Assembly (NCBI RefSeq): GCF_021869535.1
Contig: NW_026262745.1
Coordinates: 85,064,001 to 85,128,000 of the forward strand
DNA length: 64,000 nucleotides
Source of the DNA: Mytilus californianus
Lineage: Eukaryota
Reading direction: 5' to 3'
Shown piece by piece: positions 17,976-49,648 of the stretch. Each line of letters begins with the position of its first letter. Within the stretch, counting starts at the first letter, position 1. The translations under genes were made by a program, and so were the position numbers. The notes under the pieces are model-generated. The model was not told where the DNA came from, ran no database searches, and worked only from the letters and a program-made list of their open reading frames with translations.

Positions 17976-19279
17976 ATCTATTGGCTTAAAATTATGCTTT
18001 TTTTATTTGTCCTTTGTAGGCTGTGCCTAAAATTTGTTGCCATGTTATGCTTTCGGCTTCATTTAACAGCGGAATCAATTCAAATATTGATCGAATGAGT
18101 ATAAAATGTATCTATGGATAAGGAGTTTTAGTATGTACATGTTATTACAACATAAACCAAAACGGATATGGACTGACAAGAAATACTTCAACGGCATTTA
18201 GTCTTTGCTTGAGAATTTATCTTTTGCAATCTAACCACATCTTCTTTTTTGTGTAATGAAGATGTAAGCTAAATAGTTAATCGTCCGCTCACTGGAGTTT
18301 TTCTTTTGCACACAACTAAAAAATATGTTCAAACTCGGAAATATAAAATATTGAGGAGACGCCTTCCTTTATCTCAAGAAGAAACCTAAATATACCAATT
18401 TTAGTTTGTACCTTATAATAGATATATTAATGAGTTGCAAAAAACATATATGAATTAGCGAGAAAACTGGTTTGAAAATTAAATATATACTGGAACACAC
18501 ATTAAAACAGTCATAATTTACCAACCAGCGTCCAGATCGTCACTTTTTTTTTTCGTGTCATTTAAACAGTGGTTGTTGTTTTCATTAAAACAGATTTATC
18601 ATAGTTTGTACTTATGTTATAATATGAATCTTCTTCTAACAATCATATTCACCCAAAGATATTTCCTTGCAAACAATATTTTTGAAAAAAAAAATGTCTG
18701 ATGTGTATGTCAGTTTTAAAATATGGCTTAAAAAGAAACACAGTTGTTAAAGATTTCAGTACTAGGAGATTTTAGTGAATATGAAATACATGATTTAGAA
18801 TTAATATCAGAAGTTAATTTCGATAAAACATAAATAATAACCACAGGAAATAAAGAAGTTCGCAATCTTCTACTATAGTCTTAGATAAGAACATATCATT
18901 TAAGATGACTCGATAAAAAATCTGTAAAACACAACATTTTTTTTCGAATTTAGGGTTTTCCTTTGAATGGATTACATTTGTCCTGTCTGAACCTTTTATA
19001 TACAATATACGTGTTGTTCATTGTTGAAGACCATACGGTGACATATAATATATATCAATCCACGTTTTTTGGACTCTGTTGGAAAGTTGTCTCAATGGCA
19101 AACATACCGCATCTCCTTATCTTATGTGTTATACGATTTGTCTGAATAGAAAATGCATGTGAAATACAAATGTTGGCCTGCATTTCTAACTATGATTATT
19201 AATAGGTTATTTCGGACTGATAACTGTCGAAATAACTTGATGCAGTCAATTTGTTCTTGTGAGTATCAAAAAAAGAAGA

Positions 19280-19815
19280 TGTGTTATTATTGCAATGAGA
19301 CAATTCTCCCCCAAGAGACTTAATGAAATGGAAGTTAACAACTATATGTCACCGTACGGCCTTCAATAATGAGCAAAACCTATGCCGTATAGTCAGCTAT
19401 ATAAGACCCCGAAATGACAAAATGTAAAACAATTCAAACGAGAAAACTTACAGCATAATTTATGTACAAAATAATGAACGAGAAACAAATATGTAGCAAC
19501 AAATGACAACCACTGAATCATGTGAATTATAGACTCCTGACTTAGGACAGGCACATACAGAATATGCCGGGGTTAAACTAGTTTGAAGGCACCAACCCTC
19601 CCCTTACCTGGAACACTGGTGTAACAGTATAACATACGAACAAACTATAAGAATCAGTTGGAAAGGGCTTAAATCATCAGATCAATAGAAAACAGATTAC
19701 ATCAAACAAAAACACAGACCGGACGTGGCAGTGTACTTATACATTTCCACAACAAAACAGACTACAAATGTAGGTCTGAGAGTACTTGCAGTTACTGACA
19801 GCTAGCTAAAAGCCA
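19280..19815 (-). repeat. Second, inverted copy of the same repeat family
   Basis: Reverse complements of both terminal motifs of the 16960-17975 copy (GAAGATGTG..ATGAGACAA at 19280; GAGTACTTGCAGTTACTGACAGCTAG..AAAAGCCAA at 19780-19815). Confidence 0.7.
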
Positions 19816-20084
19816 ATAATAAGGTCCATTTTGCTCATAAAGCTCCTAAAGTTTACAAGTTTTTGTATATGCTTTTGGGTTTAGGCGTGCCTAATGAATG
19901 TGTTTCGGATGCAACACATTGATATTGTGTTATTTTCATTAATAACAGGTCAATGTGTTACTGGTACTAAGATATGTGTTTAATTTAGATTCATAATGAA
20001 AATAAAAGGTGAATAAATTATGAAGATATAATAATAACATCGATTTTAAAATTAATAGAAACATTTTGAGCTATGCCATACAAT

Positions 20085-21345
20085 AATGATTTGATTTTGA
20101 TTTTTGGTGTTTTATCGCCACTTTCACTACAAAAGTCCAAAAGTCTGAAAAGACCAATTGTTGTCCTAATTTGCATGAACAATTACTCGACATTCTCCAA
20201 AAGTATGACTTGTGTCTTAATTTTTCTTGACAAATTCTAATTTATATTAAATTTGTATGAAATTTACTCGACAAATTCTCGACATTCTGAATATGGTCTT
20301 AAAATTTCTTAACAAATTCTTGACATTTGAATACTGTCTTGAAATTTCTCGACTGAGTCTTGAAATTTCTCGACATATTCTCAACATTCTTATTTTTTCT
20401 CAGTATGGCTTGACATATTCTGAACATTTTGAATTGTGTCTTAAATTTACTTGACAATTCTGAGTTTTACAAATCATGACCAGTATACATGATATAACTT
20501 TATCTTTATTTCTTTTTATATAATATACTGTTATTTCAAGTTTCACTTATTACAACAAAACAAAATTTGGGCATGTAAATATTTTTATAATTAACAATTT
20601 GGGTATATAAATATATTGATGAATACAAATGTGGGTATGAAATTTGAAATATTAACAAATATGTTGATATAAACCAATTTAAATGTAGGTTTGTGAATAA
20701 TTACAAAAGTTGATTCATAAATCTTATAAATAATTTCTAAATGATTAAAACCAATCATACTGTAGACATTTCATTCTTCATGCATAATATGCAATGTTAA
20801 TATAGTAAAAAACAATTATTTTACCAAAATGTGTCTTTTATTAATTAGCAAAGTATTATTGTATCCTAATTCTTCTAAGTTTAGTTTAGCGAGGATAAAA
20901 ATTGAGTATATGTATAACAGCAAAAGAAATTGGTCGAGACTAATCAAGACTCTTATCAGATGATACAAAAAGTGTCGAGAAATTTTAATACAATGTTAAT
21001 ACTGTCAAGACATTTGTCAAGAAAAATTAAGAACTTCATTAGACAAATTCATACTTTGTTAAGATTTTTTATTAAATAATTCAGAGACAAAGAAAGAATG
21101 TCGAGTAAAAATTCATGCTAATTCAGACAAAAATTGGTCTTTTCAGACTTTTTGACCTTTAGTGTTTTAAGCACCGCTTTTGGCTATTTCGTGGCGGCCA
21201 GGTTTTATTGGTGGAGGAAGCCGGAGTGCCCGGACAAAACCACAGACCTTCGACAGGAAAACTGACAATCCTATTCAATTAAGATTGGAATCGAGTGCAC
21301 CTGCACGAGCGGGGTTCGAACTCACAACCTCAGTGATGACTGCTA
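20085..21345 (-). mobile_element. tRNA-derived SINE (V-SINE/RUDI-like core) split by the CACTA element
   Basis: B-box GTTCGAACCC and core GGTTTTGTCCGGGCACTCCGGCTTCCTCC at 21165-21345; 3' end AAAGTGGCG..AACACC plus (ATCAA)n tail at 20085-20124. Confidence 0.75.
20125..21164. mobile_element. Non-autonomous CACTA/EnSpm-type element
   Basis: CACTA...TAGTG termini. ~65-bp imperfect TIRs sharing AAAAGTCTGAAAAGACCAATT. Repeated subterminal CTCGACA motifs on the left, TGTCGAG on the right. TTT on both flanks. Confidence 0.8.
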
Positions 21346-21439
21346 CCAAAGCCCCTACCATACAATATTTGATATCTGTGGGATCGATGTATTTATAATA
21401 CAGGAGACATTCGATATTTCACTGAGTATACTTATTCAC

Positions 21440-21600
21440 CGTTCCTATGAAGCAGGATTCATAACAGAAAGAAGAAATGCACACGCATCTTGCAAGGGTC
21501 GCTAATTTCACTTTCAGATATACTGATGATGGCATATCACTCAACAATATCTCAGTGAGTACTTGCAACTCATATATCCAGTGAACTGAAGCGTAAGTAG
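21440..21600 (+). pseudogene. Penelope-like RT fragment
   Basis: YEA.FI...HLARVANFTFRYTDDGISLNN, a degenerate (F)RYIDD motif. Confidence 0.6.
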
Positions 21601-22178
21601 AGAGACCAGAATAGTTTATTTTGTCCGCCATTTTGTTTTCCAGTTGACAATTTTACTAATATTCAAAGAAATTGAAATATTATTTTCTTGTTGTTCCCGT
21701 ATATCCTAAGTGTCATTATATTGTTAAAATGAAGGATGAAAGGTTGTGTTTTCTATTATAATAAACTATTTTGATTACTTGTAGTAATAAATTTTCATTT
21801 TCAGGCGAATTCGCGATGTTTTTTCAAAAGAACGTCATCCGCGGCACGCATTTCGAGCAGGGATAGCCCTCTTCAAACTGAAATAGAAATATGTTCCTGA
21901 CGTCATATCGATCTAATTTTGTTATCCAATGAAAGAGCAGGGTTTCTTTTTACTTTTGGTACCAGTCAAATTTCATCTTCCGGTTTCTATGACCTTGCAA
22001 TTTCAATAACAAAAGTTCAAGTCGAACATTTACCAGATTAAGTAAGAATTTTACTTTTTTGACCGAGATATTTTTAATCTTCAATATTTTATCTTTAAAA
22101 TGATCTAAATCTCTCCTTAAAATTTAACCGGGAACATATTTCTTTTCAGCGTCGAGTAATAACAGTGCCTACGTGAAA

Positions 22179-22272
22179 ATGTCCAGTGAACAGGAATGTT
22201 GGAAACGGCTGTCGGAGTTCAACGTTAATCGTGAAACAGTGGTCGCTTTGTTGAAGGACGAGAATTATACCG
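22179..22272 (+). CDS. Putative exon 1 of a large DDE transposase
   Basis: ATG at 22179 (MSSEQECWKRLSEFNVNRETVVALLKDENYT). Phase-1 donor G|GTTAGT matches the phase-1 acceptor TTTCAG|AT at 23212, giving NYT-D-GWSLEK. Confidence 0.6.
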
Positions 22273-23211
22273 GTTAGTTCTCATATTTAATGCTTTTAAC
22301 TTTTTTTAAGCTTTAGAAATTAGGAAAATAAAAGAATTTGAATAACGATAAAGCAAATAAATTGGGGCAATAGGGGGTGGGGCATAGATATAAATGTAAG
22401 TTCATCGTGAAAAAGGAACCGATATAGGGAAGTTTCAATGAGACTTAAGTGTCAGGTCAATAAACAAAGGGTTCTGGTTCATTTTTTAGCAAAGATACTA
22501 ATAATGTTATAGTTTATCGGAAGCTTGTCACTGATTATAAGATAATTTCTAAAATTTAAACCTAGATCATGCACATGTTACTTTAATATACCTATCTTTA
22601 GGTAGAGGAAATTCCTTACATAAATATGTTTCAAATTTAGCAACGGATATCCAATCCACACTTGAACAGGGTGTTTTTATGTTAATTTTTACATAAAATT
22701 AAAAAAAAATAATACTGCATCATTTTAATAAATGTATGAATCATGTTCCATGGCATTAGAACCTTTTCTTTGTGGTCCCTTCTTTGTGTTTTTCAGCTTA
22801 ATGGATATTTAGAATTGTTCGAACATCTAGAATGTCAGCAAATTTGGATGATGTAGCCTCTAATAGATGTTGTATTGCTGGATGATGAAACTATATGAGT
22901 GAACTCATTGCTTGACAAGTCAATATATGATAATGCCATACCATCGTAGAAATAGAAACCATACTTATCTCTTACCATCACCAACCAATGATCATGATGT
23001 CATATTATTTTCACCATCGCTGGACGATGACAATTTAGACCATGGTATATTTGTAACACGTACCTGATGAAATAATAGGTGAGGTATTTTAAACAGTAGA
23101 ATGTTTAACAAATGGGCACATATGTGGGGTATATGTTCATGAGACAGCAACAGATTAACTGGCAAAGTTTTTAATATACTTGTTTATTTTTGGGTACGAT
23201 TATTATTTCAG

Positions 23212-26200
23212 ATGGTTGGTCGTTAGAGAAATTAAAGAGCCCAATTTGGAAAGAATTTTATTTCTGGGATGCAGTCATTAAAGTTGTTGAAGAAGAAGAA
23301 GAAATGTCAATTAAAGAGAACTTACCAATAGCTTTTAAGAACTTTGATATTTTAATTACTTCTGTGTCATCTTTTGTAAGAAAAATTAGAAACAGAATGG
23401 CTCTGATTTTAAAACGCATTGATGTTACTTTAGGTTATGATGTAGTTTTTGGAAATGAAATTTTAGTGAAGTAGGGCCCTATTGTATGAAATATGGTATT
23501 TCATTACAATGGTTAAAGAACCCCTCTAAGTTGGAAGGTATTTTGAATTTACCAATTGGTTTAATTGTAGAGTTACGAAAACTCAGACTCCGACACAATT
23601 TCACTTTTAAAGATTTTTCTGTTTGGATAAAATTAATGTTGGGTCTCGATTATTGTCCTGATGTCGGTTTTTTGAGGAGACAAATGGAAAGTTTTTATAA
23701 AAGGCAGCTAGCTCTATCTAAAAACAGTAAAATAGATCAAGACATGTACTTGGATAGTATATATGTACCCCCCCCCAAAACCAAATATAATGCTACAGGG
23801 AAAAATGAAGGTGAAGGCCTTCAACAAAGGCGTCCTTGTTTAAACACTGTAGATGGAGAGAAATGTATGTTGAAAAAGAATGTACAAAATCTTGAAAACA
23901 AATTGAAAATTGCTAGGCATGCAAGAATGAATGCAAATTTAAAATTAAATGAATTAAAGAAGAGCAATGTGAAACTGAATAAAAAATATGCTACATGCTG
24001 TATAAAACTGTCCAACTTTTCTACAAGAAATGTAAATAAAAAGCTAAAGCGGAGGCAAAAGAAAATACAGTTTCTTCAGTCAGAAAATAGCAAACACATT
24101 ACAGAAAAAAAATTAATAAAACAGAAGTCAGAAATAAGCAAACAAATTCATAAACAAACATCATCACTATTGAAATATTACCGCGACAAGTATAGAAATT
24201 TGAAAAAAGCTAAAGTCACTCAAAATTTAACACAAAAAACATGCAACAAGGAAAACATTGAGGTTTCTTCACTTAGAGAGAAAGTTTCATATTTAGAAAA
24301 TGAAAATTTTATTCTCAAAGATGAATTGGAAGAACTTTCACAATCAAAAATGGTCACTACATTTCATGAAGGTAAATACACAGATGATGTACGGGAGGTG
24401 TATGCTACATTGTTATCTATGAATGTAGGCGTGAAAAACATAGAAAATGTCATGAAAACAGTTTTAGAAAAACTTGGAGGTTTAAAAGTAGAAAGGCTTC
24501 CCAAAAAAACCTTTGCAGAATATATGATGATTGAAGCTAAGGCATTAGCTCAAATTCAAGCTGCAGAAGCTATGTTAAATAGTAATTTTAATACGTTACA
24601 TACAGATGGGACAAAACGTATGGGTGGGGAATTTGGGGGGCTTCAAGTTGGTACCGATTCCGGGCAACTCTCTTTAGGTATTTCGGAACTTGTGAGTGGC
24701 AATACCGAAAGCTTTTTAAAAATGATTGACCAAATTTTAAGTGATATGGGTAGTTTATTAGAAACTGATTAGGATATAGCTGTAAAGAAGGCAAAACTAC
24801 TTTTGTCAGTCAAAAATTTAATGACAGATCGTCATATTGTAAATACCTGTTTGAAAAATTGTTTAGAAAAAATGCGTTTTGAGTGTATACCGGAAGATGG
24901 GGATACACCGGAGAAAGTTAGAAAAAAAGTTGCTACATTAAATGGTTCTAAATGTAATTTGCATGTTATTGTAAAGTTTGCTTCCCAGGCAGAAATTGGC
25001 CTTAAACAATGGGAAAAAAATATTTCGAATTTAGATAATGTTGAAGATAATAATGTTAATTTTACTTATAATCAGTCAACAACTGATTTTATTAGAGCTT
25101 GCTGCAAACTTTGTGTACCAGGTGCTGATGAAAAGTCTGGTTACGGTTCATTGTTTCGAACATTTTTGAGTGATAATAACATTGATCTTAAGTTGACCAC
25201 TTTTCACGGTCATCGTATTAATTTGCTTTTTGCTATGGGTGCATCTGTGTTTTTTCACAAAGATAATATTTATGAATTTATTGATTTGTATTTTGAAAAA
25301 GAGAATAGACATAATTTATTAAAAGCTGTTGCTAATTATGTTAAAAATCCAATGTATTTGGATGGTTGTCGAGCTTTTGGAATAGTTGACAAGTTATTTA
25401 CTGGTCCTTTGTGGCGTATTATAGAAAATGCAGATCATATCTTAGATTTAAATCAGGTGTGGGAACAATTTAAAGGGTTTTTAGAGATTTATTCTCAAGA
25501 TGCTACTGATTTAGTACAAGGAAAAATATTGTATAAAAACTATACTAATATTGATGAAATTTTTGGTTGTTTATTTGCTGTTGAAGACGAAGAACACAAC
25601 ATTCTTACTACTGAAGCTCTTCAAATTATTTTATTAAACTTTCAGTTCATTCTAGAGAGACAGTTAAGTGACTGTCTTCCTGGAGGAATATTAAATGAAA
25701 AAACTGATGGGATTGATATAAATTTAAGAGAACAAAGCAAATCAGTTGCTACTACCAATATTATTTCGGAAAGAGATTTTGCAAATTTAGACAGGCTTCA
25801 AAGGGAAAAACCAAATGCCAATTTAATTGCACTGGAAGGTATTATTTTGTTTGCTAACAACAAAACAGTTAAGTGGTTGAATAATTTAGAAAGTGAAAAA
25901 AAATCTGAATATTTTAAAATAGCAAGACAACGTACACCAGAGATCATTAAACAGTTTAAAGAAAGAAAGATTGAAATAAAAAATCAACATTTATTATTAC
26001 TTAAGAAAAGAGAGGCAGATAAATTAAAAAAACAATTGCAAAAGCAGCAAGAAATTGAAAAAATTTCAAAAGACATTCAGAACATAGGTGGTCTTTGGCA
26101 AAATATTGAAGACATTAATAAATTTTTAGTTAACTTAACTCAAAATGAAAAGATTGAAGCGGTAAAAACTCAACTTAAGTTTAGGAAAAAAGTTTTACAC

Positions 26201-26890
26201 ATGAATGTTGAAGATAAAACACTTTTACAATTTTCTTCTAATAATATTTCATTTTCTTTAGCAGAGCTTATTTCTAATTTGAAAGTTCTTATACATTTGA
26301 ATATTAATGTGAACAATGCACAATCTGGAACCAAAGATGCATGTATTATTTTTTGTATTAAATCAAAAGAAGAAAGGGAGCAAATTATGGAAAAACAAAG
26401 AGAACTCATTTGTATAAAGCTCAATGAAATAAAAATTAAACAGAACCATTCAGTCTGTGACCCAGTACAGAAAAAACCAAGAAAATCAAACAGTAATAAA
26501 GCTAATTATCAGAGTCAAAATCATGATAATGTAGAAGAAACTGATTTTGTTGTTAGCAAACCTTCAGAAACATATACTCCAAAGTCCATAGTTTTGAAAG
26601 CTGGACAGTATGTAGCTGTAGCATATATTGATACCTGGCATCCAGGTCAAATTTTATCTGTTAAAAATGATTTACTGGTTCAGGTAAAAATTTTGTGTCC
26701 ATCCCAAAATATGGGCAATTTGTTTAAATGGCCACAAAAAGATGACATTAGTGTTGTGGAAAATATTTTTATTTTCTGTTCAGATTTCGAAGTTAACGCA
26801 AAAGATTCAGGTGGAAGAACTTGGGTTTTAACAAATTATGATACTATTTGTTCTGAATATAAGAAATATTACAATACCTATTTTGTCTAG
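23212..26890 (+). pseudogene. Unclassified DDE/RNase H-fold transposase (about 1257 aa reconstructed) with coiled coil and C-terminal Tudor/SH3-like domain; one frameshift, one in-frame TAG
   Basis: HTDGT (D at 24605), MTDRH (D at 24827), CNLH (24953), TNIISERDF (E at 25769). 1-nt frameshift near 23459-23471; in-frame TAG at 24770-24772 (ETD*DIAVK). C-terminal YVAVAY..WHPGQI..V..KWPQKDD. Confidence 0.75.
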
Positions 26891-27699
26891 GGTTTATGAA
26901 ATCATGTGTTTACATGCTATGTCATAAATTTATGTAAACAGATATCATAAATTTCTGTGTAGTAGTCATATATATTTCTTTCTATTGCTGCTAATATTAC
27001 TATGATTTAATATAAACTTTATCTTAATAAATAAGTATAGCATATTAATAACTTTTTTTTTTTTTCTTGTGATGTTTTAGTCTGGATCCCATAGATGTAA
27101 GCTTGACCAGCAATTGCATTGCAAATTTGGAAAAATGTCATGGAATGGTAACCTATCAATAGAACCTTGAGGAATCTCGGACTCAGTAGTGGTACAACTT
27201 CAAATGATTCAGTGATGCACTGATGGTACAACTTCAACAGAATTATCCAATTGATATGTTATTGATGAAGAAAATGATGATGCAGGCATATAACAGTGCT
27301 AGTAGTGAATTTATTAGAGCTGTTTAAAAAATAAAATACATTATATGCTGGAATTTTTTTTCATGAAATCATCAAATATCACATGTATCAGGCATAATTT
27401 GTTTCAGTCGATGAATCAATAACATAATGACATTTTATTATTTGGCTCCAGTAACATCCAGTGGCAAATATTTCAAGCATATTCAGGATGAAATATACAA
27501 CATGTAAATGCATAATTTGATATGCCATGTGCATGTTTTTTTACAAATGAACTCAGTCTCAGGATGGGTAGTCAATTCCTGTTGCCGGTTTGATAACTTG
27601 TGTTAAGATATTTAGTTGAATACCAATATTACAAAACTCAGCTGAAAAATGAGAGAATAATGAAGATAAAACATAGATCGTGATGTAAAAACTTGGGAT

Positions 27700-28200
27700 T
27701 ACCTTCAAATGGGAGCCATTTTGGATCATTCAAAACCTGATACCTTGTATTAAAACAAACAATTTGATACCAACATTGCAAAAATCAGTTGAGAAATGAC
27801 TGAGTATTGATGAAAAATGTTTAATCGAAACAGAAAAACTCCGAAATGGGAGCCATTTTGAATCAAAATTTCTGCCATTTTGAGTTGTATTGTCACAATT
27901 CATTCCAAAATTGGTACCTTGTGTTAAGACAAACAATTTGATACCAGCATTGCAAAAATCAGTCAAAAAAATGACAGAGTAATATGACAAAAAGCATTTA
28001 ATCGGGATAGAAAATCTAAAAAACGGGAGCCATTTGGAATCAAAATGGCTACCAATTTGAGCTGGATTGTCCCAATACAATAAAAAATTGGTACCTTGTA
28101 TCGAGACAAACAATTTGATACCAGCATTACAAAAATCGGTCAAGAAATATGAGAGTAGGACTAAAAAATGTATAAATTTCATTCAAAAGTTATGAAATTG
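27700..28200. repeat. About 177-bp tandem repeat, 3 copies
   Basis: ACAAACAATTTGATACC recurs at ~27755, 27929 and 28106; GGGAGCCATTT recurs with similar period. Confidence 0.85.
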
Positions 28201-30769
28201 GCGGCCATTTTGATTAAAAATGGCCGCCATACTCGCTCTTTTAAGCACAAAGAAATAACCATCACATGCATTGATAACTGTTTTAATCTCATGAAAAATT
28301 TCATGAACACATCTTTAGTAGTTTATGAGATATTTCCATTTTAGTGCTACCATTGGACACTACAATACTTATTGTTGTAATATTGACCTCGGTGCCATTC
28401 ATCATTTTAATGTCAAAGAGGCTGGGAGTGCAAACTGAGCCTTATTTTTTTTTATGTCCTTCAACCTACTTGTCCAATTTTTCATAATTGTACCATTTGT
28501 GATGAGTTGCAGGGTGAAATCAATCTATAATGTTATATGCATACCATCATTTTTGATAATTGATAGAGCTATATGGTTATCGTGTCCCATTATGCAAGGC
28601 AGAAAACAGCACTTTATGGAAATTTGTATGGCTGTTAAATTTTTTGAGAGCATATCATGGACAACTCTGAACTGTAATATAATAGAATGTGGTATACACT
28701 GTCAGAAAACAAGCAGTATGTGGTTGATATATGTCAATGTGGATCAATATTAACCTTCCAAAAGGGACTTCAATGTCTATAAAATGGCGGCCATCTTGGA
28801 TAAAAAAGGGGGGATGAATTGGAAACTCTGAACACTCGTAACTTTTGAACCAGATATCCGATTAAGACAAGTAATAGCTCAAAATGTTTGTCTTAATGAG
28901 CTTTATCCAATAACATACATAAATGACAATATATTCCCTGTAAATAAATAGGCCTGGCCTCTCTAGCGTAAGGATACTTCCATGCTAGTTCTTTCTTTCT
29001 AAGCAATAACATGCCCTCTGTCCTATTGTATGGTGTAAACATATTTTGATTAATACGTTACGGGCTAGCATTTTCACACTATATGGTTATCATCACAAAT
29101 TGGATTTTGTATCTTTTTTTTACGATTGTGACGGTTTGACTGATTGTGGATTCGCATGGCAGATGATACATGCATGAGACGCTTACCATGTCGACTCCTC
29201 CGGTCCCGCTCCTTTAATGGGTTAGTTCGACTCAATATTTCAAATTCAAAGCCAATTTTGCCATCTTCAACTTGCAATATGAATTTGATGTTAATTTTCT
29301 CTCCGTGAAAGAAATGTGACAAATTTCACTTATGCAAAATATGGCCTTGAATTTCAACCACGACCGACGTCAAGTGATGATAATAGCTCACCTGACCCTT
29401 CGGATTAGGTGAGGTTAAAATTAAATATTCAAATCAACGAATAAAAGTTTTTAAATTGTATATCTATATGTATTTCAGTTTCCGTATTTACAATTGTGTT
29501 TATACAGTTGTTTGTTTTAAGTTGACCGATTATCGTGTTTAATATATTTATTGTAATGAAAATTCAACGAAAGAATGACATCGTTCTAAAAAAAATATAA
29601 TCCTGTAGTGGCACATTACGTAGCGGTAGTGTTGTTAATTTGAAAACAAAATGCTGATAGACTAAAGAAACCTATGAACACATAGAATTTGCCCTTTCAT
29701 GGAATTGTTTTAAAGCTGCCTTAGATCAAATTGCTGAAGACGCAGTATTGTACTGATATTTCGTTAAAGTTTGAGATAAATATAAATACTAATTGTAGGA
29801 CCGCTCAAAAGAACTAGATCAGAAGTTTTTGCTGGTGAGAAAATTAAAGTTAGTATGTCATAGTCATCCCGGCTCTTATTTAAGGGATTTAGAATTAGTG
29901 AAGGTACATGGTTCATTTGATCGTCTAATAACAAAAATGACCTCGATACACAGAACAGACTATTCAAACACAAGCTAATACTCAGGGGACACAAGAAAAA
30001 TTAAATTAATGCACTAGTAAATAAATCACTTCGAAAAAATAGGCAAAATACATTATGTTACAAAACAAAAAATAAACAGAAAAGTCCACCACGAGTCATA
30101 ACTTTTGTTAATGTAATCACTTATTTAAGTAGTTGGGAAGACGAATAAGAAAACACTGGCATTTGATTGAAGATCATGCAACCGCTAAACATCTTTTCCC
30201 CAGACCGCCTATAATTGCTTATCGTAAACACAAGAATGTGAAGGAGTACTTGACCTCGGCAAAATTATAAAGTAATAGATAAGGAATGGACATTAAACTA
30301 TAAGTGTATTACAGATTCACCAGGTGTAGTGCCCCAAAAATGTAACTGCATTTGATACGTTTCACGAAAAAAATATATTGATTAAAATTAAAAAGTATTC
30401 ATCATCGAATATTATAGTGAAAAAATACCTGATGAGCATGTACGGCCATGGTCGAATATGACCTAAATGATACCCGAAACACCAGATGTAACCTCATCAA
30501 ATCAAAGAAATATTTAGTAAATTATTTGATTACCACAGTCCATTCCTTTCAAATATATAGATGTGTAAAATTTAATAATTTATCACAGAACAATGTGCCG
30601 AAGAAAGGTCAAATCAGGTCTCATTAATTTAAGAAAGTGAAGTGAATATATATACTTCAGGCGAAACATCTTATAGACAATGATAATAGTAAGTTTTGCT
30701 GGAATTGGTTCTTGGACACGAATAGTTATAAAATATAAAATATGCAAATAATCTATTTATAAATTGACA

Positions 30770-41300: not shown

Positions 41301-41975
41301 TGGGGTGTTAGGGATTCGACTTTGGAGAGTGTGATTTGTTTTTCTAATTCAGTTATTTTTTTTTATAACTCCATAAATTCTATGTAAATTCAGAGCAGGT
41401 AACCATGCTTAGTTTGGAGATGACAAAACATTGGCCGCAGTGAAAGGAAATGTACTTTATGTAACTCAGGCGATATAGGTTATTAATTTTTATTTCATGA
41501 TATATTTTGCTATTCTATGTTAAAAAAGAATGTACATTATATTATGTAAATGTTTACATAGACCAAGTATTCTGTCAATTAACTCACTGTTTGGTAATGA
41601 AAAACAATCAGTTTAAAGAAGTGTGTTTATTCATTAAATGTATCAATAAAAAGAGGATCGAATCCGTCCTTGTACATGTATTTTGTCATCCTTAATTTCT
41701 AAATATTTCGTTTAACAGCTTATTATACATGTATGATGTTGTACTTCATTTTAACCTCATTGTTATAAGTTTACTGAGAAACATACAATATTAATAAAAT
41801 ACAATAAAATTGAATGTAAACAAATTCAGTATATACGAAAATAAGGAGATGTGGTATGATTGCCAATGAGACAACTATCCACCAAAGTGATATATAGGAC
41901 GCTTATTTAAAATGAAGTCACAATGTTATCAAGACGAAGTATTTAAAAAAAAATTCATTAGCGGATTCAGATGTA

Positions 41976-42423
41976 GGGGTAAATTCAGTAAAAAATCTCC
42001 CATTGACTGTAATGCTAATCTATGTCTTGAATTAAATTTATACCTGATTTACCTTTAGAAATTAGAAAATTTCATATATCATTCATGAAAGTACAAATGT
42101 AGCCCTATCATTTGCAACAATAAAAACATAGGGTCATGCGGCATTTTTGGGCATTCACATGGCCTTGTTTACAAACACTGTAGATTCGCACTTAATTCCT
42201 TCACTGACCCCATTACTTTTCAACCCTGTAGTAAAAAAATTTAGTACATTCAGCATTTATTTTTTATTTTTTTTCAACTCTAGTTTTTATCCATCTATCA
42301 AAAAATATTTATTACAAACATTATCTACCAATCAGAAGAGCACATGACTTCAGTTTTATACAGAAAGCTCTCCCCCAAATGGGCGGTCCCTGATGACGTA
42401 TATTTATTTACTGAATTTACCCC
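41976..42423. mobile_element. 448-bp TIR element, copy 1
   Basis: 17-bp perfect TIR GGGGTAAATTCAGTAAA; left flank TGTA, right flank TATA. Confidence 0.9.
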
Positions 42424-43665
42424 TATAAGGGACTTTTTAGTAGCTTTTCCCTCTTTTTTTGTAATAATCATGTAATGTATCCAATTTTCAAGTTCCAGTT
42501 TCAATACAACATTCATAAATGCTGAACTTGTAAAGATAGAGGAAAATTTATACTACAGCCCATACTGCGGCCAATGTATATTTGGTATATAAAGTTGCAT
42601 ATTGACTGTTTGTAAAAGAATGGTGTAAAATACTATGCTTAATAAATATGAATTGTTTTCTGTGTTTGCTTTGACCAGTATTGCAAGTACATCTAGAAAC
42701 TAAAGTCTTGATGTACTCTTAGTTAAATTTTGCCTTATATGGAAGTTTTTTATTAAATACCCTGAAAAGACCACAAAAACACTTTTCAAAGGTTTTTTTA
42801 AGCAGTTTCATACAAAAAAAACCAACAATTATGTTTCATTTTACTAAATTTGTGTTTTAATTACTTGTAAAGTTCACAAAATGCCATTGACAATCACTCT
42901 GCAGAAATTCCTGTTACCCCAACATCAGGATGGTTTCTTCGCCAAAACTAGACAGACAAAACTGAAGTAGAAAAAAGTGCCAAATATGAAAAAATAAGAC
43001 TGGGTATGACCAAACTTTGCATTTGGAAGATTAAAGTAACAATTTAGAATATTTAAAAGCAATTATTTAACATAGTAATCCAATTACAAACATTTCAACA
43101 CTAGTTTCATAGATGAAGGGCATGTAATCATATAAAGTTATCTACAATTTTTTTTAAATAAAGAAACGCAATGCGTTATGTAAAAATAAATGAATATCTT
43201 CATGCGGTCAGATTATTCAAGTGTTAAAATACTTGAAAAGTGCTTATTTACAACTTGTTCTACAACTTAACATGGTGAAACACAGCTAAAAAAAATACAC
43301 TGTCAAAGGGAGGTAATTCTGATTTTCCATATGATTTTACACATAATGAGGAGAAATATGTGCAAAATGTGTTGTAAAATGGGGGGAATATTTATGCCTT
43401 TCATTGATATCATAACTCTCAAGTGTAATTTCTATTGTTTCTTTCAATCTGGACACAAAAACTGATTTTTACCATATACCCCATGCTTCCTCTCACAGTA
43501 CACTCAGTGCATCTTCGATAGCCGAATTAACATAGAAATTTGTGTAAAAAACAACTTCAAATGACTCCAAAATGCTTCCATTACATTAATATACACAGGA
43601 AATAAGTTTTGTGATTATTGTGTGGCCTTGGACAAGTACAGTGACAGAATGCATATTTTCCTATA

Positions 43666-44113
43666 GGGGTAAATTCAGTAAAAAATCTCCCATTGACTGT
43701 AATGCTAATCTATGTCTTGAATTAAATTTATACCTGATTTACCTTTAGAAATTAGAAAATTTCATATATCATTCATGAAAGTACAAATGTAGCCCTATCA
43801 TTTGCAACAATAAAAACATAGGGTCATGCGGCATTTTTGGGCATTCACATGGCCTTGTTTACAAACACTGTAGATTCGCACTTACTTCCTTCACTGACCC
43901 CATTACTTTTCAACCCTGTAGTAAAAAAATTTAGTACATTCAGCATTTATTTTTTATTTTTTTTCAACTCTAGTTTTTATCCATCTATCAAAAAATATTT
44001 ATTACAAACATTATCTACCAATCAGAAGAGCACATGACTTCAGTTTTATACAGAAAGCTCTCCCCCAAATGGGCGGTCCCTGATGACGTATATTTATTTA
44101 CTGAATTTACCCC
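43666..44113. mobile_element. 448-bp TIR element, copy 2 (direct orientation; one substitution seen versus copy 1)
   Basis: Same TIRs; A42195 corresponds to C43885; left flank TATA, right flank TGTA. Confidence 0.9.
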
Positions 44114-45509
44114 TGTAGGATACTGGTAGTACTTATAGAAAGATATTTTATTCTAATATTTTTAAGATTTGGAAAAATAAAATATCTTTCTATAATTATG
44201 TACTTGTAACGATGTTACATTTCAATCCTTTTAGACAAACATTTTATTTTCGTAGTAACCATGATAGTACCATACACATCTATGATAGTACATTCCATAC
44301 TACGTCAATTATGTTCATTCACTTGCACAATACGATCATTGATGTTTTGTTTCTACCTTTCGATGAATGAATGGGACAATGTGTTTCGTTTGTGATACGT
44401 TCTTTCTGAATGACAAAACGCTTAGCTTCTGTATGTTCGTTTTATAGCATGAAAAAAAAATGTGCAACCCATCATAAATCATATTATTATGAGATCCTTA
44501 TTACATGTAGCTACGACATTGTCAGGACAATAACCTAGTATATGATTGTGTCCCGTCAGTATGAAAGAAAAATAAAAGTGGTTCATATATTCATCCATAT
44601 AAAAGTGGCACTTGTGTTTATCCTTATATTTTTTTCATAATCCGGTACGTCATGATAACTGTGTTGTTGCTTAAAGAACATTTCTAAATAAAAAATATCA
44701 CAAGTTTAATATTTCGACCCCACTATTTGAAAATCAGGCGACAACACAGCATTTTTTAATTCTTATTACGTTCGTAGTAACATTGTACATTCTGTTGTCT
44801 GTCACCTGTGTCAATTCACGTGCACACTACGATTGTTATTCTATTTAAATCTTTGTGTGTTTGTGAAACGCCAGAATGTTATCAATGAATTGTCAAACGC
44901 TAAACTTGACTGCAGTTCAGTGTAATACTATTGAACGGTGTTTTATCTCATAACAGTATTTCACTTTCATATATAAGCCTTGCAATAGCATGCATATCAC
45001 AAGAGAGGCAATATAAACCAAAGGGATATTCAAACGCATCAGTAGAAAACAAACTGACAATGCCATGGCAAAAAAAACAGAAAAACGACGGAAAGACAAA
45101 CATCAGTACACAAAACACAACATAGAAAACTAAAGACATCAAATGGCATTCTCCATACAATTGGTAAAGTACTTCATCAAGCAAACGTATAGACTTCCTG
45201 CTATCATAACTGTGCTACGTGGATTAACACGGGTTTCTATTGGCCATTTATTGGCTCAGTAATGCCTTTTTATTAAATCATATCAATAAACAAATGCATT
45301 ACATCTATTTTATTATTTCATGACTTTATAAGGTTTATGTTCAATGAATTGAAAATGCTTCATGTATGCCCATCGTCCCATTACATCGGCTGGTAATCTC
45401 TTCTAAAATAAAAAGATAAAATATAATCAAAAGTACAGACATACATACAGACAGACAGACAGACATGTATATATAAGTACATTATGTAATAGAGTACTAT
45501 GAATATCGG

Positions 45510-47566: not shown

Positions 47567-49648
47567 TTAATTACCATCATTTAACGAAGTGCCACAAATT
47601 TGAAATCCATTCGGGACATTTGGATGATTTGTTGGTGACTCATTTATCATCATCCCCATACCATTGGTATTGTGTAAATCTATATGACAATGAAAAAACC
47701 ATACTCCTGGGTTATCGGCCTTAAATCTAATGACAACGTAACCACCAGTTGGAACGATAATTGAATCTTTTTGAGGTGGATTATTCCAATTAAGAAAGGG
47801 ATGAGATCCGTTTGACCATGAGTTGTTTCGCCATTTTGCATAAGAACAAAATATTTTCGGGTCATTGCAAATTAAATCTTGATTGTCCTGACCTCCATTT
47901 TGAACAAGCCTGCCTGAATTTTTATCGTAGTTACCAAATGCCATTTTCATGACATAAAACGAGTGTCCATGCAAATGTATCGGATGAGACCAACCAGAAC
48001 CATTTCCAATATTAGTCAACACAAACTGGTATATCTTGTCTTTATTTGGACTATGTAATGTTACAGCATAAGTGCATTGACAAATAGTGGTTTCATTACA
48101 AGCATCACAGTTGTAGTCTACTGTATCGGGATGTTCGTATGCACCAACTGATGGCGGTTGAAACTGGTGACCATTCACTGACCCTGGTGTGTATCCTTTA
48201 TCGCCAGGGAATGCAAAATTAAAAAAGTGTTCAATTGCATCGCCTTCTACATCCTCTGTGTGGGAATTAGGGTCTGCTGATCTGACATCATTCAATGAGA
48301 GACATCTTCGATTTTCAGCTGCAGGATAATACGCAAATGGACAATTAAAAACTGTTCACGTTGTTAAACAGACTTCCTCTTTGGCCTTTGCTGGATTTAG
48401 ATTTATTTTGTTTTGCGAACTGTTATAAAAGATAATTGCTTCGGCAACATGATATTGATTTCTTTGTTTGGCTTCAACTTCTAATGTTTCGGCAACTAGT
48501 AAGTACGTTCCTGGAGTTTGGTTAGCAACCATTAAAAAATCGATCCTTTCACCAGGATGGATTATGAAGGATTCAACTGGTTCCTTTTCTATTTCAAAAC
48601 CATCTGATGCTACTATATATATTGATTGGTGTTGCTGTACAAAAACCCGAAATGGATATAGAGTAGCTGCACTAATTACTCGGAATCTATAAGTCTGATT
48701 ACTTTGTACTACAAATCTTGTAAGTGGAGAGCCATTGGTTTGGTTGTTTGTAAGATAAAAACGCCCTCGACCATTGATAAGACCGGAATGGAATTGAAAT
48801 CTACTGTACATGGCACCAGATAAGTCTGACGTTGTGTTATATAGACGTCCTGTGTTCATGTCGTAATCACCTACCAGCATTTTCTGGTACAGAACATCAG
48901 CATCGTCGTTATGATTCCAGTCTTGTATAGCTACAACAAATACATTGCTTCCTTCTTGGGGCTGAGAAATATTTTGACCACGCATTGGAAGAATAATCAG
49001 CGGTCCATACAGACCCATTGTCCTTTGATCCCCGATATGGGCATGGTAAAAACTGGTCCCAAATGGTTTTCCTTTAAACTGGTATGTGAAATTTTGTCCT
49101 GGGAGTATAGGACATTGCGAAACGAAGGCTACCCCATCTGACCAAGGTGTATTTTTCTGTTGCATACCATGCCAGTGAATGGTTACAGCATCCGTATGCA
49201 ACAAGTTACGAACGTGTACAATTATATCTTGATATTCATACGCAGTGATTGCAGGTCCAGGAAATCGTCCATTTAATAATATAACGATTTTCGAGTGATT
49301 TCCATCAGCTAAAACAAATGTGTCTTCTTTTTGTTGATCGTATGTCTGCCCAGTATGATAGTTAACAGCCCTTCCATTTAATGGCTTTAACAGTATTGCC
49401 TGTGTTGAATTGGGTCCTTTGTAAATCATACTAAGTTTATGGTCTACAGTCAGAAAGCATTCACAAATTAAGTCGGTCTCTCTACATGTTCCTTCTTTAC
49501 AAGCAGTTCCATTTTTTTGAAGTTGATCGAATAAATCTTTGTCTGTCATTTCTGATGTTGAAATATCCACAAATACAATAACAGTAAAGAAAAAGCAAAT
49601 ATGTCTGAAAACAAAAGAATAATAATTAGTGTGTATCATCAAAAACAT
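47567..49648 (-). pseudogene. Intronless secreted multicopper oxidase (laccase-like), 693 codons including one in-frame TGA at 48356-48358
   Basis: The two listed ORFs share a frame (EEVCLTT*TVFNCPFAYYP). Copper motifs TIHWHG, FYHAH, HPIHLHGH and WFFHCHIDLHNTNGM (axial Met) all present; hydrophobic N-terminus. Confidence 0.9.

What the first reader, a model, noticed from the sequence alone, without database searches (positions are those of the whole stretch)
41972..44117. Composite transposon or cointegrate signature: two near-identical TIR elements with reciprocally swapped TSDs around 1.24 kb of cargo
Seen: TGTA-[E]-TATA...1242 bp...TATA-[E]-TGTA. E is 448 bp with 17-bp perfect TIRs, and I saw one difference between copies. 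Neither copy has matching flanks alone, but the outer pair (TGTA) and inner pair (TATA) match. Flanks beyond 4 bp differ, which excludes simple tandem duplication. Inference: either both copies moved together using their outer ends, like a bacterial composite transposon, or a circle carrying TATA-[E]-TATA integrated into a TGTA-[E]-TGTA site (recombination or IS26-like cointegration). Either route moves unrelated DNA in an animal genome and could help generate presence/absence variation.
Basis: partly seen in the sequence, partly recalled or inferred. Interest (0 to 1): 0.72.

Follow-up and report, generated by a model that had tools for sequence, protein, structure and literature searches.

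The report
Non-autonomous KolobokP transposon copy
This is one ordinary copy of a known mussel jumping gene (KolobokP), normally built as two identical ~450-base end pieces around a middle piece, so the "cargo" is the element's own gutted middle and not captured host DNA.

Summary
Two 448-bp direct repeats lie at 41976-42423 and 43666-44113. They differ at one base and each has a 17-bp perfect TIR. They flank 1242 bp. The outer flanks are TGTA/TGTA and the inner flanks TATA/TATA.

It is not a one-off composite around unrelated DNA. The same repeat-middle-repeat unit recurs at 20 or more loci in this 1.65-Gb mussel genome. The outer 4-bp duplications differ between loci but match within a locus, and the inner TATA is constant. 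There are also solo repeats with 4-bp TSDs, and tandem multimers up to satellite size.

This is the published KolobokP architecture (Kojima & Bao 2022, PMC9587614): LTDR-INT-LTDR.
- The repeat is collinear with the LTDRs of autonomous KolobokP-4_MyCo and KolobokP-8_MyEd.
- The "cargo" matches the 5' and 3' ends of the KolobokP-4_MyCo internal region and has no ORF, so it is an internal-deletion derivative.
- A candidate autonomous partner lies at C88:85.18 Mb, with the same LTDR ends, a 3609-bp internal region and a His-Me nuclease ORF.

The two LTDRs of a copy are sisters: 4 differences in 13 copies against 31 expected for random pairing. This favours whole-unit transposition over a circle joining an unrelated resident LTDR.

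Verdict: known kind. This non-autonomous family is not among the Mytilus rows I read in the paper's table. Interest is low.

The parts
41972..41975 (.). Left copy of the 4-bp target-site duplication, TGTA
   Evidence: It matches 44114-44117. Outer 4-mers match at 14 of 20 related loci.
41976..42423 (+).
   Evidence: Collinear with the published LTDRs of KolobokP-4_MyCo and KolobokP-8_MyEd. An exact 25-mer and an exact 31-mer taken from them hit at 42123 and 42385.
41976..41992 (+). 5' terminal inverted repeat of the left LTDR (17 bp)
42407..42423 (-). 3' terminal inverted repeat of the left LTDR (17 bp)
42328..42410 (+). Promoter-like string at the 3' end of the LTDR: CCAAT (42328), GGGCGG (42381), TGACGTA (42394), then an AT-rich TATA-like stretch. 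It faces the internal region. This is inference only.
   Evidence: Read directly. The last ~60 bp are the best conserved part against the published Mytilus LTDRs. No expression data were available.
42424..43665 (+). It starts and ends with TATA and is a deletion derivative of an autonomous KolobokP internal region.
   Evidence: No ORF of 50 aa or more lies wholly within the INT; the one overlapping ORF (63 aa, minus strand) runs into the LTDR. No Rfam hit. Short probes from the published KolobokP-4_MyCo-I hit collinearly at 42556, 42809, 43302 and 43567, each with 0 expected by chance. The sequence is multi-copy in the genome at 98-99% identity.
43666..44113 (+). Right LTDR, 448 bp, one substitution (position 220, C) relative to the left LTDR
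44114..44117 (.). Right copy of the 4-bp target-site duplication, TGTA

Best explanation
41972-44117 is a monomer (LTDR-INT-LTDR, 2138 bp plus a 4-bp TSD) of a non-autonomous family of KolobokP. KolobokP is the lineage of Kolobok DNA transposons whose normal architecture is an internal region between two ~450-bp long terminal direct repeats, each with its own short TIRs.

The 1.24-kb middle is what remains of the autonomous internal region after loss of the transposase and His-Me nuclease genes.

The copy most likely arrived as a whole unit. A Kolobok DDD/E transposase supplied in trans by autonomous relatives would have used the outermost TIRs (left end of the left LTDR, right end of the right LTDR) and duplicated the target TGTA. 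The inner TATAs are the fixed ends of the internal region.

Shown: the structure, family membership by architecture and by homology of both LTDR and INT, the TSD rule, and the existence of a likely autonomous partner.
Inferred: the enzyme, and the route of this particular copy (about 0.7 whole-unit, 0.2 circle into a resident LTDR). The confidence given is for the identification as a non-autonomous KolobokP.
For: Architecture. The 448-bp LTDR, 17-bp TIR, GG...CC termini and 4-bp TSD match the published definition: LTDR about 450 bp, TIR 11-18 bp, 5'-RR..YY-3', TSD 3-5 bp.

All four published insertion forms are present here:
- monomers and solo LTDRs with TSDs;
- (LTDR-INT)n-LTDR multimers;
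- LTDR-(INT)n-LTDR with a single TATA at the INT-INT joint. The paper describes the same single TATA for KolobokP-1_MeMe.

Homology. The LTDR is collinear with the KolobokP-4_MyCo and KolobokP-8_MyEd LTDRs (exact probes). The INT is collinear with the 5' ~1.4 kb and 3' ~200 bp of KolobokP-4_MyCo-I (probes).

Autonomous partner. At C88, on the minus strand, an E-type LTDR 3' end joined to TATAAGAGAC sits at 85187332-85187358. An E-type LTDR 5' end sits at 85183707-85183732. That gives a 3609-bp internal region; by subtraction KolobokP-4_MyCo has 3616. A PF05551 His-Me nuclease frame lies at 85183947-85184183 on the complementary strand, 215 bp from the right LTDR. This is the published gene layout. 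Similar pairings occur at C57:11.58 Mb.

Whole-unit route. In 13 intact dispersed monomers the left and right LTDRs differ at 4 sites in total. Random left-right pairings give 31 (permutation p < 5e-5). Both LTDRs of a copy also share locus-specific variants.
Against: - The transposase itself was not seen.
- Comparison with the published consensus sequences was by eye on machine-read supplement text plus short probes, not a full alignment.
- Left-right identity could also come from gene conversion after integration.
- For this copy alone, 1 difference is compatible with either route; the mean solo-versus-monomer LTDR difference is 2.2.
- No reads could be laid, so no empty-site or solo-LTDR allele was examined and the assembly at this locus was not checked independently.
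Confidence: 0.92

Rival explanations
1. Circle (translocatable-unit) route. A circle of one LTDR plus one INT, released by recombination from another monomer or multimer, joined a pre-existing solo LTDR that already sat at this TGTA site. The joining was by homologous recombination or IS26-like targeted integration. The old TSD would be kept. This rival concerns the route only; the element would still be a KolobokP.
For: - It gives exactly the observed flank pattern.
- Solo LTDRs with 4-bp TSDs exist as possible targets.
- Multimers that could shed such circles are abundant.
- Kojima & Bao propose this route (their Fig. 5b1).
- This copy's single left-right difference is within the range expected for a resident and an incoming LTDR.
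Against: Under this route the two LTDRs of a copy should differ wherever the resident and incoming LTDRs differed. Across 13 intact monomers they differ at 4 sites against 31 expected. Private variants are present in both LTDRs of the same copy, for example at C46:1.40 Mb, C143:23.18 Mb and C157. This would need frequent later gene conversion.
Confidence: 0.2
2. True composite capture. Two copies of a 448-bp MITE inserted independently on either side of unrelated host DNA, and the pair then mobilised that host segment.
For: The LTDR alone has both TIRs, and solo copies with TSDs exist. The paper argues that solo LTDRs can be excised.
Against: The middle is homologous to the internal region of an autonomous KolobokP from another Mytilus species, at both its 5' and 3' ends. 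That autonomous region also begins and ends with TATA next to the LTDRs. So the arrangement is inherited from the autonomous element, not assembled from host DNA.
Confidence: 0.02
3. Non-autonomous LTR retrotransposon (TRIM- or LARD-like): E is an LTR, the middle is the internal region, and the 4-bp TSD comes from an integrase.
For: Direct terminal repeats, a 4-bp TSD, solo repeats and tandem repeat-internal-repeat arrays also occur in LTR elements. TRIMs are known in bivalves (PMC6934838, listed).
Against: - The repeats end GG...CC with a 17-bp perfect TIR, not TG...CA.
- There is no tRNA-complementary primer-binding site after the left repeat and no polypurine tract before the right repeat on either strand (read).
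- There are no tRNA-like or other Rfam hits.
- Both the repeat and the middle are homologous to a DNA-transposon family.
Confidence: 0.01
4. Assembly artefact, or a stray piece of the 1.24/1.69-kb tandem array mis-placed here.
For: The same units form very long arrays elsewhere. No reads could be laid on this locus.
Against: - The unit ends precisely at LTDR termini and is bracketed by a matching TSD in unique flanks.
- The same monomer form with different matching TSDs is seen at 14 or more other loci.
- This copy carries 8 private substitutions in its middle, so it is not a collapsed copy of an array.
Confidence: 0.02

Closest known systems
KolobokP-4_MyCo (Mytilus coruscus, 4509 bp) and KolobokP-8_MyEd (M. 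edulis, 4536 bp), autonomous KolobokP families of Kojima & Bao 2022
   Same: LTDR of 447-450 bp, a 16-17-bp TIR starting GGG(G)TAAATTCAG, and a 4-bp TSD. The LTDR sequence is collinear over its whole length. The internal region starts and ends with TATA next to the LTDRs. The 5' ~1.4 kb and 3' ~200 bp of the internal region are homologous.
   Different: Here the internal region is only 1242 bp and has no transposase or nuclease ORF. It lacks ~430 bp within the 5' part and everything between about 1.4 kb and the last ~200 bp. By eye the LTDR is only about 80-85% identical to either published consensus, so this is a different family or subfamily.
Non-autonomous KolobokP families (for example KolobokP-4N1_CorFlu, KolobokP-7N2_CorFlu, the 8 oyster families of 1738-3261 bp) and KolobokP-1_MeMe multimers
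   Same: The monomer size class (2138 bp). Abundant solo LTDRs and multimers. INT-INT joints that keep one TATA.
   Different: This family reaches satellite scale here. There are at least 31 consecutive units (52 kb) at C88:15.82-15.88 Mb and mixed arrays over at least 76 kb at C110:12.54-12.62 Mb, as well as on contigs C117 and C15. The family is not among the Mytilus rows of the paper's Table S1 that I could read.
Bacterial composite / pseudo-compound transposons (IS26 translocatable units)
   Same: Two directly repeated TIR-bearing end elements around a middle. The flank pattern is the one a one-repeat circle joining a resident repeat would give.
   Different: The end repeats encode nothing. 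In the autonomous relatives the enzyme genes sit in the middle. The middle is not an opportunistic passenger. The near-identity of the two end repeats within each copy argues against the targeted-integration route as the main one.
TRIM / LTR retrotransposons
   Same: Long direct terminal repeats, short TSDs, solo repeats, tandem repeat-internal arrays.
   Different: A 17-bp TIR, GG..CC ends, no primer-binding site or polypurine tract, and DNA-transposon relatives.

Membership tests
KolobokP (Kolobok superfamily) | LTDR-INT-LTDR architecture with directly repeated long ends | tested here: met
   448-bp direct repeats at 41976 and 43666 around 1242 bp. The same unit occurs at 20 or more loci.
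KolobokP (Kolobok superfamily) | Each LTDR has its own short TIR (11-18 bp) and termini 5'-RR...YY-3' | tested here: met
   A 17-bp perfect TIR with GG...CC termini; the definition is.
KolobokP (Kolobok superfamily) | LTDR length about 450 bp (or about 660 bp) | tested here: met
   448-450 bp in all 102 copies aligned.
KolobokP (Kolobok superfamily) | TSD of 3-5 bp flanking monomers, solo LTDRs and multimers | tested here: met
   4 bp. 14 of 20 dispersed units and 3 of 4 solo copies are perfect. The consensus is T-N-T-A.
KolobokP (Kolobok superfamily) | Solo LTDRs, (LTDR-INT)n-LTDR and LTDR-(INT)n-LTDR forms; the INT-INT joint loses 3-4 bp | tested here: met
   All forms were seen. The INT-INT joint keeps one TATA; compare.
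KolobokP (Kolobok superfamily) | Sequence homology of the ends and/or internal region to an autonomous family that encodes the Kolobok DDD/E transposase | tested here: met
   LTDR and INT are collinear with the published KolobokP-4_MyCo / KolobokP-8_MyEd sequences. This rests on by-eye comparison, plus six short probes with 0 chance expectation. No full alignment was run.
KolobokP (Kolobok superfamily) | An autonomous partner in the same genome with the same LTDR ends, encoding transposase plus His-Me (His-Cys box) nuclease | tested here: inconclusive
   Coordinates alone support it: C88:85183285-85187790 has E-type LTDR ends, a 3609-bp INT, and a PF05551 frame in the published position and strand. 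C57:11.58 Mb is similar.
Bacterial-type composite transposon carrying unrelated cargo | The middle segment is foreign to the end elements (an opportunistic passenger) | tested here: not met
   The middle is the deletion-derived internal region of the same transposon lineage.
IS26-like translocatable-unit integration | The two end repeats of a unit come from different sources (resident plus incoming) | tested here: not met
   At family level the left and right LTDRs of a copy are sisters: 4 observed differences against 31 expected, p < 5e-5. This cannot be decided for this single copy.
LTR retrotransposon / TRIM | TG...CA LTR ends, a primer-binding site and a polypurine tract | tested here: not met
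   GG...CC ends with a 17-bp TIR. No primer-binding site or polypurine tract on either strand.

The most novel reading that the evidence does not exclude
KolobokP copies may regenerate both LTDRs from a single template LTDR at each transposition. For example, this could happen through the one-LTDR circular intermediate hinted at by Kojima & Bao. The ends would then be born identical, as in LTR elements, rather than carried over from the donor.

This would explain two results here. First, 10 of 15 young monomers have identical LTDRs although their internal regions carry up to 9 private substitutions. Second, LTDRs show about 2.3-fold less diversity than internal regions.

The ordinary alternatives are donor arrays with homogenised LTDRs, purifying selection on LTDRs in lineages that keep moving, and left-right gene conversion.
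Probability: 0.12. Interest if true: 0.6.

Novelty: new member of a known kind. Interest (0 to 1): 0.2.

Why it matters
For annotation, this locus and several hundred like it should be masked as a non-autonomous KolobokP family, not reported as host-DNA transduction or as a novel composite transposon.

The family is a clean, young, high-copy data set in a contiguous assembly. It includes monomers, solo LTDRs, multimers and INT-INT joints, a second subfamily, and a likely autonomous partner. That bears on the question the 2022 paper left open: how the paired-end architecture is maintained and how multimers arise.

The family also shows a DNA transposon growing into a 1.24/1.69-kb macro-satellite tens of kilobases long. 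That is relevant to how satellites originate from transposable elements in bivalves.

Tried and rejected
- ORF and Rfam scans of the element: no ORF of 50 aa or more lies wholly within the INT, and there is no known RNA.
- I first read the INT-INT joints plus E-bearing units as a host macro-satellite invaded by a MITE, with composites excised from it. I dropped this once the middle proved homologous to an autonomous KolobokP internal region.
- The DDE transposase noted by the scan at 22179-26890 of this window was checked as a possible autonomous KolobokP. It has no ~450-bp direct repeats and no E-type TIR, so it is unrelated.
The TSD sample for solo copies is therefore small.
- The exact E TIR and exact middle-end strings are absent from the paper's supplement text. 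This exact family is therefore not among the sequences held there.
- A full alignment to the published consensus sequences was left out, because they exist here only as paper text without a reference. Only short probes were used.
Full report
**Observation.**
Two 448-bp copies of an element E lie at 41976-42423 and 43666-44113 in direct orientation. They differ at one base (position 220, A against C). Each starts with GGGGTAAATTCAGTAAA and ends with its perfect reverse complement. In the 64-kb window that 17-mer occurs only at these four ends, apart from one 3-mismatch chance hit. The flanks read TGTA[E]TATA - 1234 bp - TATA[E]TGTA, and sequence beyond the four bases is unrelated. The middle (42424-43665, 30% G+C) has no ORF of 50 aa or more lying wholly within it, no Rfam match and no short-period repeats.

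**The unit is a family, not an event.**
A search of the window's own 1.65-Gb assembly with E gave 827 first-look candidates. The 40 that were scored are all 99-100% identical, and most sit in pairs or triplets about 1,691 bp apart. BLAST of E and the middle against the fetched loci showed E-middle-E at locus after locus, with the middle 98.3-99% identical to the window's.

The outer 4-mers differ between loci but match within a locus. In 20 dispersed units, 14 match perfectly: TGTA x4, TTTA x2, TCTA, TCAA, TATT, TAGT, TATA x4. Two more match at 3 of 4 bases, one is offset by a 1-bp indel, two do not match, and one was cut at a locus edge. The inner TATAs never vary. Solo E copies carry 4-bp TSDs (TAAA, TCTT, AATA). 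The pooled target consensus is T-N-T-A. A 32-mer from the E 5' end has 480 genome matches.

**Multimers and E-less joints.**
Such places are abundant (574 candidates). They lie inside long tandem arrays that mix 1,239-bp (middle only) and 1,691-bp (E plus middle) units:
- at least 76 kb at C110:12.54-12.62 Mb;
- at least 31 consecutive E-plus-middle units (52 kb) at C88:15.82-15.88 Mb;
- much of contigs C117 and C15;
- a smaller array at C2:1.12 Mb.

Arrays whose edge I could see start or end with an E.

**Identification.**
A literature search for composite transposons with TIRs returned Kojima & Bao 2022 (PMC9587614). They define KolobokP, a Kolobok lineage that is "especially rich in bivalves". 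[quoted passage not shown] The LTDRs are about 450 or about 660 bp long. Each has its own 11-18-bp TIR and 5'-RR..YY-3' ends. TSDs are 3-5 bp. Solo LTDRs, (LTDR-INT)n-LTDR multimers and LTDR-(INT)n-LTDR forms are frequent. For one family they note that the INT starts and ends with TATA and that only one TATA remains at INT-INT joints. Every one of these features is met here.

The paper's supplement (machine-read text) holds the LTDRs of the autonomous KolobokP-4_MyCo (4509 bp; LTDR 447/446; TSD 4; TIR 16) and KolobokP-8_MyEd (4536 bp; LTDR 448/450). Both begin GGGT(A/G)AAATTCAG and are collinear with E to the last base. By eye the identity is about 80-85%. An exact 25-mer and an exact 31-mer from them hit E at the corresponding positions.

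The internal region KolobokP-4_MyCo-I is collinear with the "cargo" over its first ~1.4 kb, where the window's copy lacks ~430 bp, and over its last ~200 bp. Four short probes hit in order at 42556, 42809, 43302 and 43567, each with zero chance expectation. So the cargo is an internal-deletion derivative of the autonomous INT that has lost both genes.

That step is left out.

**Autonomous partner in this genome.**
PF05551, the I-PpoI-type His-Me nuclease domain that KolobokP encodes, has at least 150 hits in the genome. Many are in tandem with 2.2-4.5-kb periods, which is what KolobokP multimers look like.

One hit is at C88:85183947-85184183 on the plus strand. It lies 215 bp from an E-type LTDR 5' end on the minus strand at 85183707-85183732. 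A probe for "E 3' end plus an autonomous-type INT start" found TTTACTGAATTTACCCC-TATAAGAGAC at C88:85187332-85187358 on the minus strand. Together these define an element with E-type LTDRs and a 3609-bp INT; by subtraction KolobokP-4_MyCo has 3616. The nuclease sits near the 3' end on the complementary strand, which is the published layout.

The same junction occurs at six more sites. Two of them are at C57:11.58 Mb, where PF05551 frames lie about 3.2-3.6 kb downstream.

**Route of insertion.**

I tested one prediction. If a one-LTDR circle joins an unrelated resident LTDR, by homologous or targeted recombination, the two LTDRs of the product should differ wherever the resident and incoming LTDRs differed. 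In 13 intact young monomers the left and right LTDRs differ at 4 sites in total, and 10 of the 15 young monomers have zero differences. Random left-right pairings across loci give 31 (20,000 permutations, none as low). Private variants are carried by both LTDRs of the same copy.

This favours transposition of whole units from donors whose LTDRs were already homogenised, such as multimers. Later gene conversion is the caveat. For this copy alone, 1 difference decides nothing. Reads that could have shown empty or solo alleles were not available.

**Other points.**
- A second subfamily exists at C1:30.5 Mb, C2:39.9 Mb, C13:70.9 Mb and C35:12.1 Mb. Its LTDRs are 3.7% and its INTs 7.2% diverged from the young one. 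It again has matching TSDs and near-identical left and right LTDRs.
- INTs are about 2.3-fold more diverse than LTDRs. Private substitutions number 54 in INTs against 7 in LTDRs (p = 0.006 or lower after length correction). This is consistent with LTDRs being needed in cis. It could also hint that both ends are renewed from one template; I give that about a 12% chance.
- The window's copy belongs to the commonest INT lineage and carries 8 private INT substitutions.
- It lies in intergenic DNA, 3.4 kb beyond the 3' end of a multicopper-oxidase-like gene.

**Verdict.**
This is a non-autonomous member of a lineage described in 2022. The particular 2138-bp family is not in the Mytilus rows of that paper's table, and its exact ends are not in the supplement text. 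Hence I class it as a new member of a known kind, of low interest.

Earlier notes of this scan recorded other Kolobok lineages in the same genome, but not this family.

Noticed in passing
G000 C88:15823727-15876000; C110:12542000-12618500; contigs C117 (10-206 kb at least) and C15 (88-113 kb); loci L043-L049: This non-autonomous KolobokP family forms satellite-scale arrays. There are at least 31 consecutive 1,692-bp LTDR+INT units, and mixed arrays of 1,239-bp (INT only) and 1,691-bp units spanning at least 76 kb. Each array has its own fixed LTDR/INT variants, so the arrays are homogenised.
   Followed up: partly
12 dispersed monomers, including window 41976-44113: LTDRs are far more conserved than the non-coding INT. 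Pairwise diversity is 0.49% against 1.14%, and private substitutions number 7 against 54. 10 of 15 young monomers have identical left and right LTDRs although their INTs carry up to 9 private changes. This could be selection on cis-acting ends, gene conversion, or renewal of both ends from one template.
   Followed up: partly
window 42328-42410 (and 44018-44100): The 3' end of the LTDR carries CCAAT, GGGCGG, TGACGTA and a TATA-like run, pointing into the internal region. This stretch is the best conserved part against the published Mytilus LTDRs. It may be the transposase promoter of the autonomous relatives. No expression data were available.
   Followed up: no
G000 C88:85183285-85187790 (minus strand); also C57:11582338-11599444 and C154:54400867-54410005: Candidate autonomous partners. 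They have E-type LTDR ends, an INT starting TATAAGAGAC, an INT length of 3609 bp at C88, and a PF05551 His-Me nuclease frame in the expected place.
   Followed up: partly
G000 C154:49955633-49996719 (4,081-bp period, 11 units); C154:57869528-57954194 (~3,689 bp); C88:39608505-39677046 (~3,718 bp); C99:49331531-49371828 (~4,450 bp); C88:132014506-132025874 (2,227 bp): Tandem runs of His-Me nuclease frames show that several other KolobokP families in this genome also form long multimers.
   Followed up: no
18 TSDs: The target consensus is T-N-T-A: T at position 1 in 17 of 18, T at position 3 in 15 of 18, A at position 4 in 15 of 18. TATA is the commonest. This is neither the canonical Kolobok TTAA nor the weak preference stated for KolobokP in the paper.
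   Followed up: partly
L052, L055, L056, L057 (C1:30.52 Mb, C2:39.88 Mb, C13:70.94 Mb, C35:12.10 Mb): A second subfamily of the same non-autonomous element. Its LTDRs are about 96% and its INTs about 92% identical to the window's. TSDs are intact and left and right LTDRs are nearly identical, so it is a separate recently active lineage rather than old decayed copies.
   Followed up: partly
L053 (C1:36688000-36697000) and L055/L060: Monomers whose INT is interrupted. One has a 3.3-kb insertion replacing INT 647-1084 (TSD TCAA intact). Two have ~130-bp insertions at INT position ~251 or ~282.
   Followed up: no
L020/L021 (C157:571515-576655): After a monomer with TSD TATA, the left flank (acagaggcTATA) and the start of an LTDR recur 1.4 kb downstream. 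This looks like a local duplication that includes the insertion site.
   Followed up: no
window 47567-49648 (minus strand): Two long ORFs (430 and 242 aa) carry multicopper-oxidase/laccase-type copper-site motifs (HWHG..., HCHIDLH). The KolobokP copy lies 3.4 kb beyond this gene's 3' end.
   Followed up: no
window 19000-30000: The DDE transposase region noted by the scan at 22179-26890 has no ~450-bp direct repeats and no E-type TIR, so it is not a KolobokP. A 175-177-bp tandem repeat lies at 27580-28230.
   Followed up: partly
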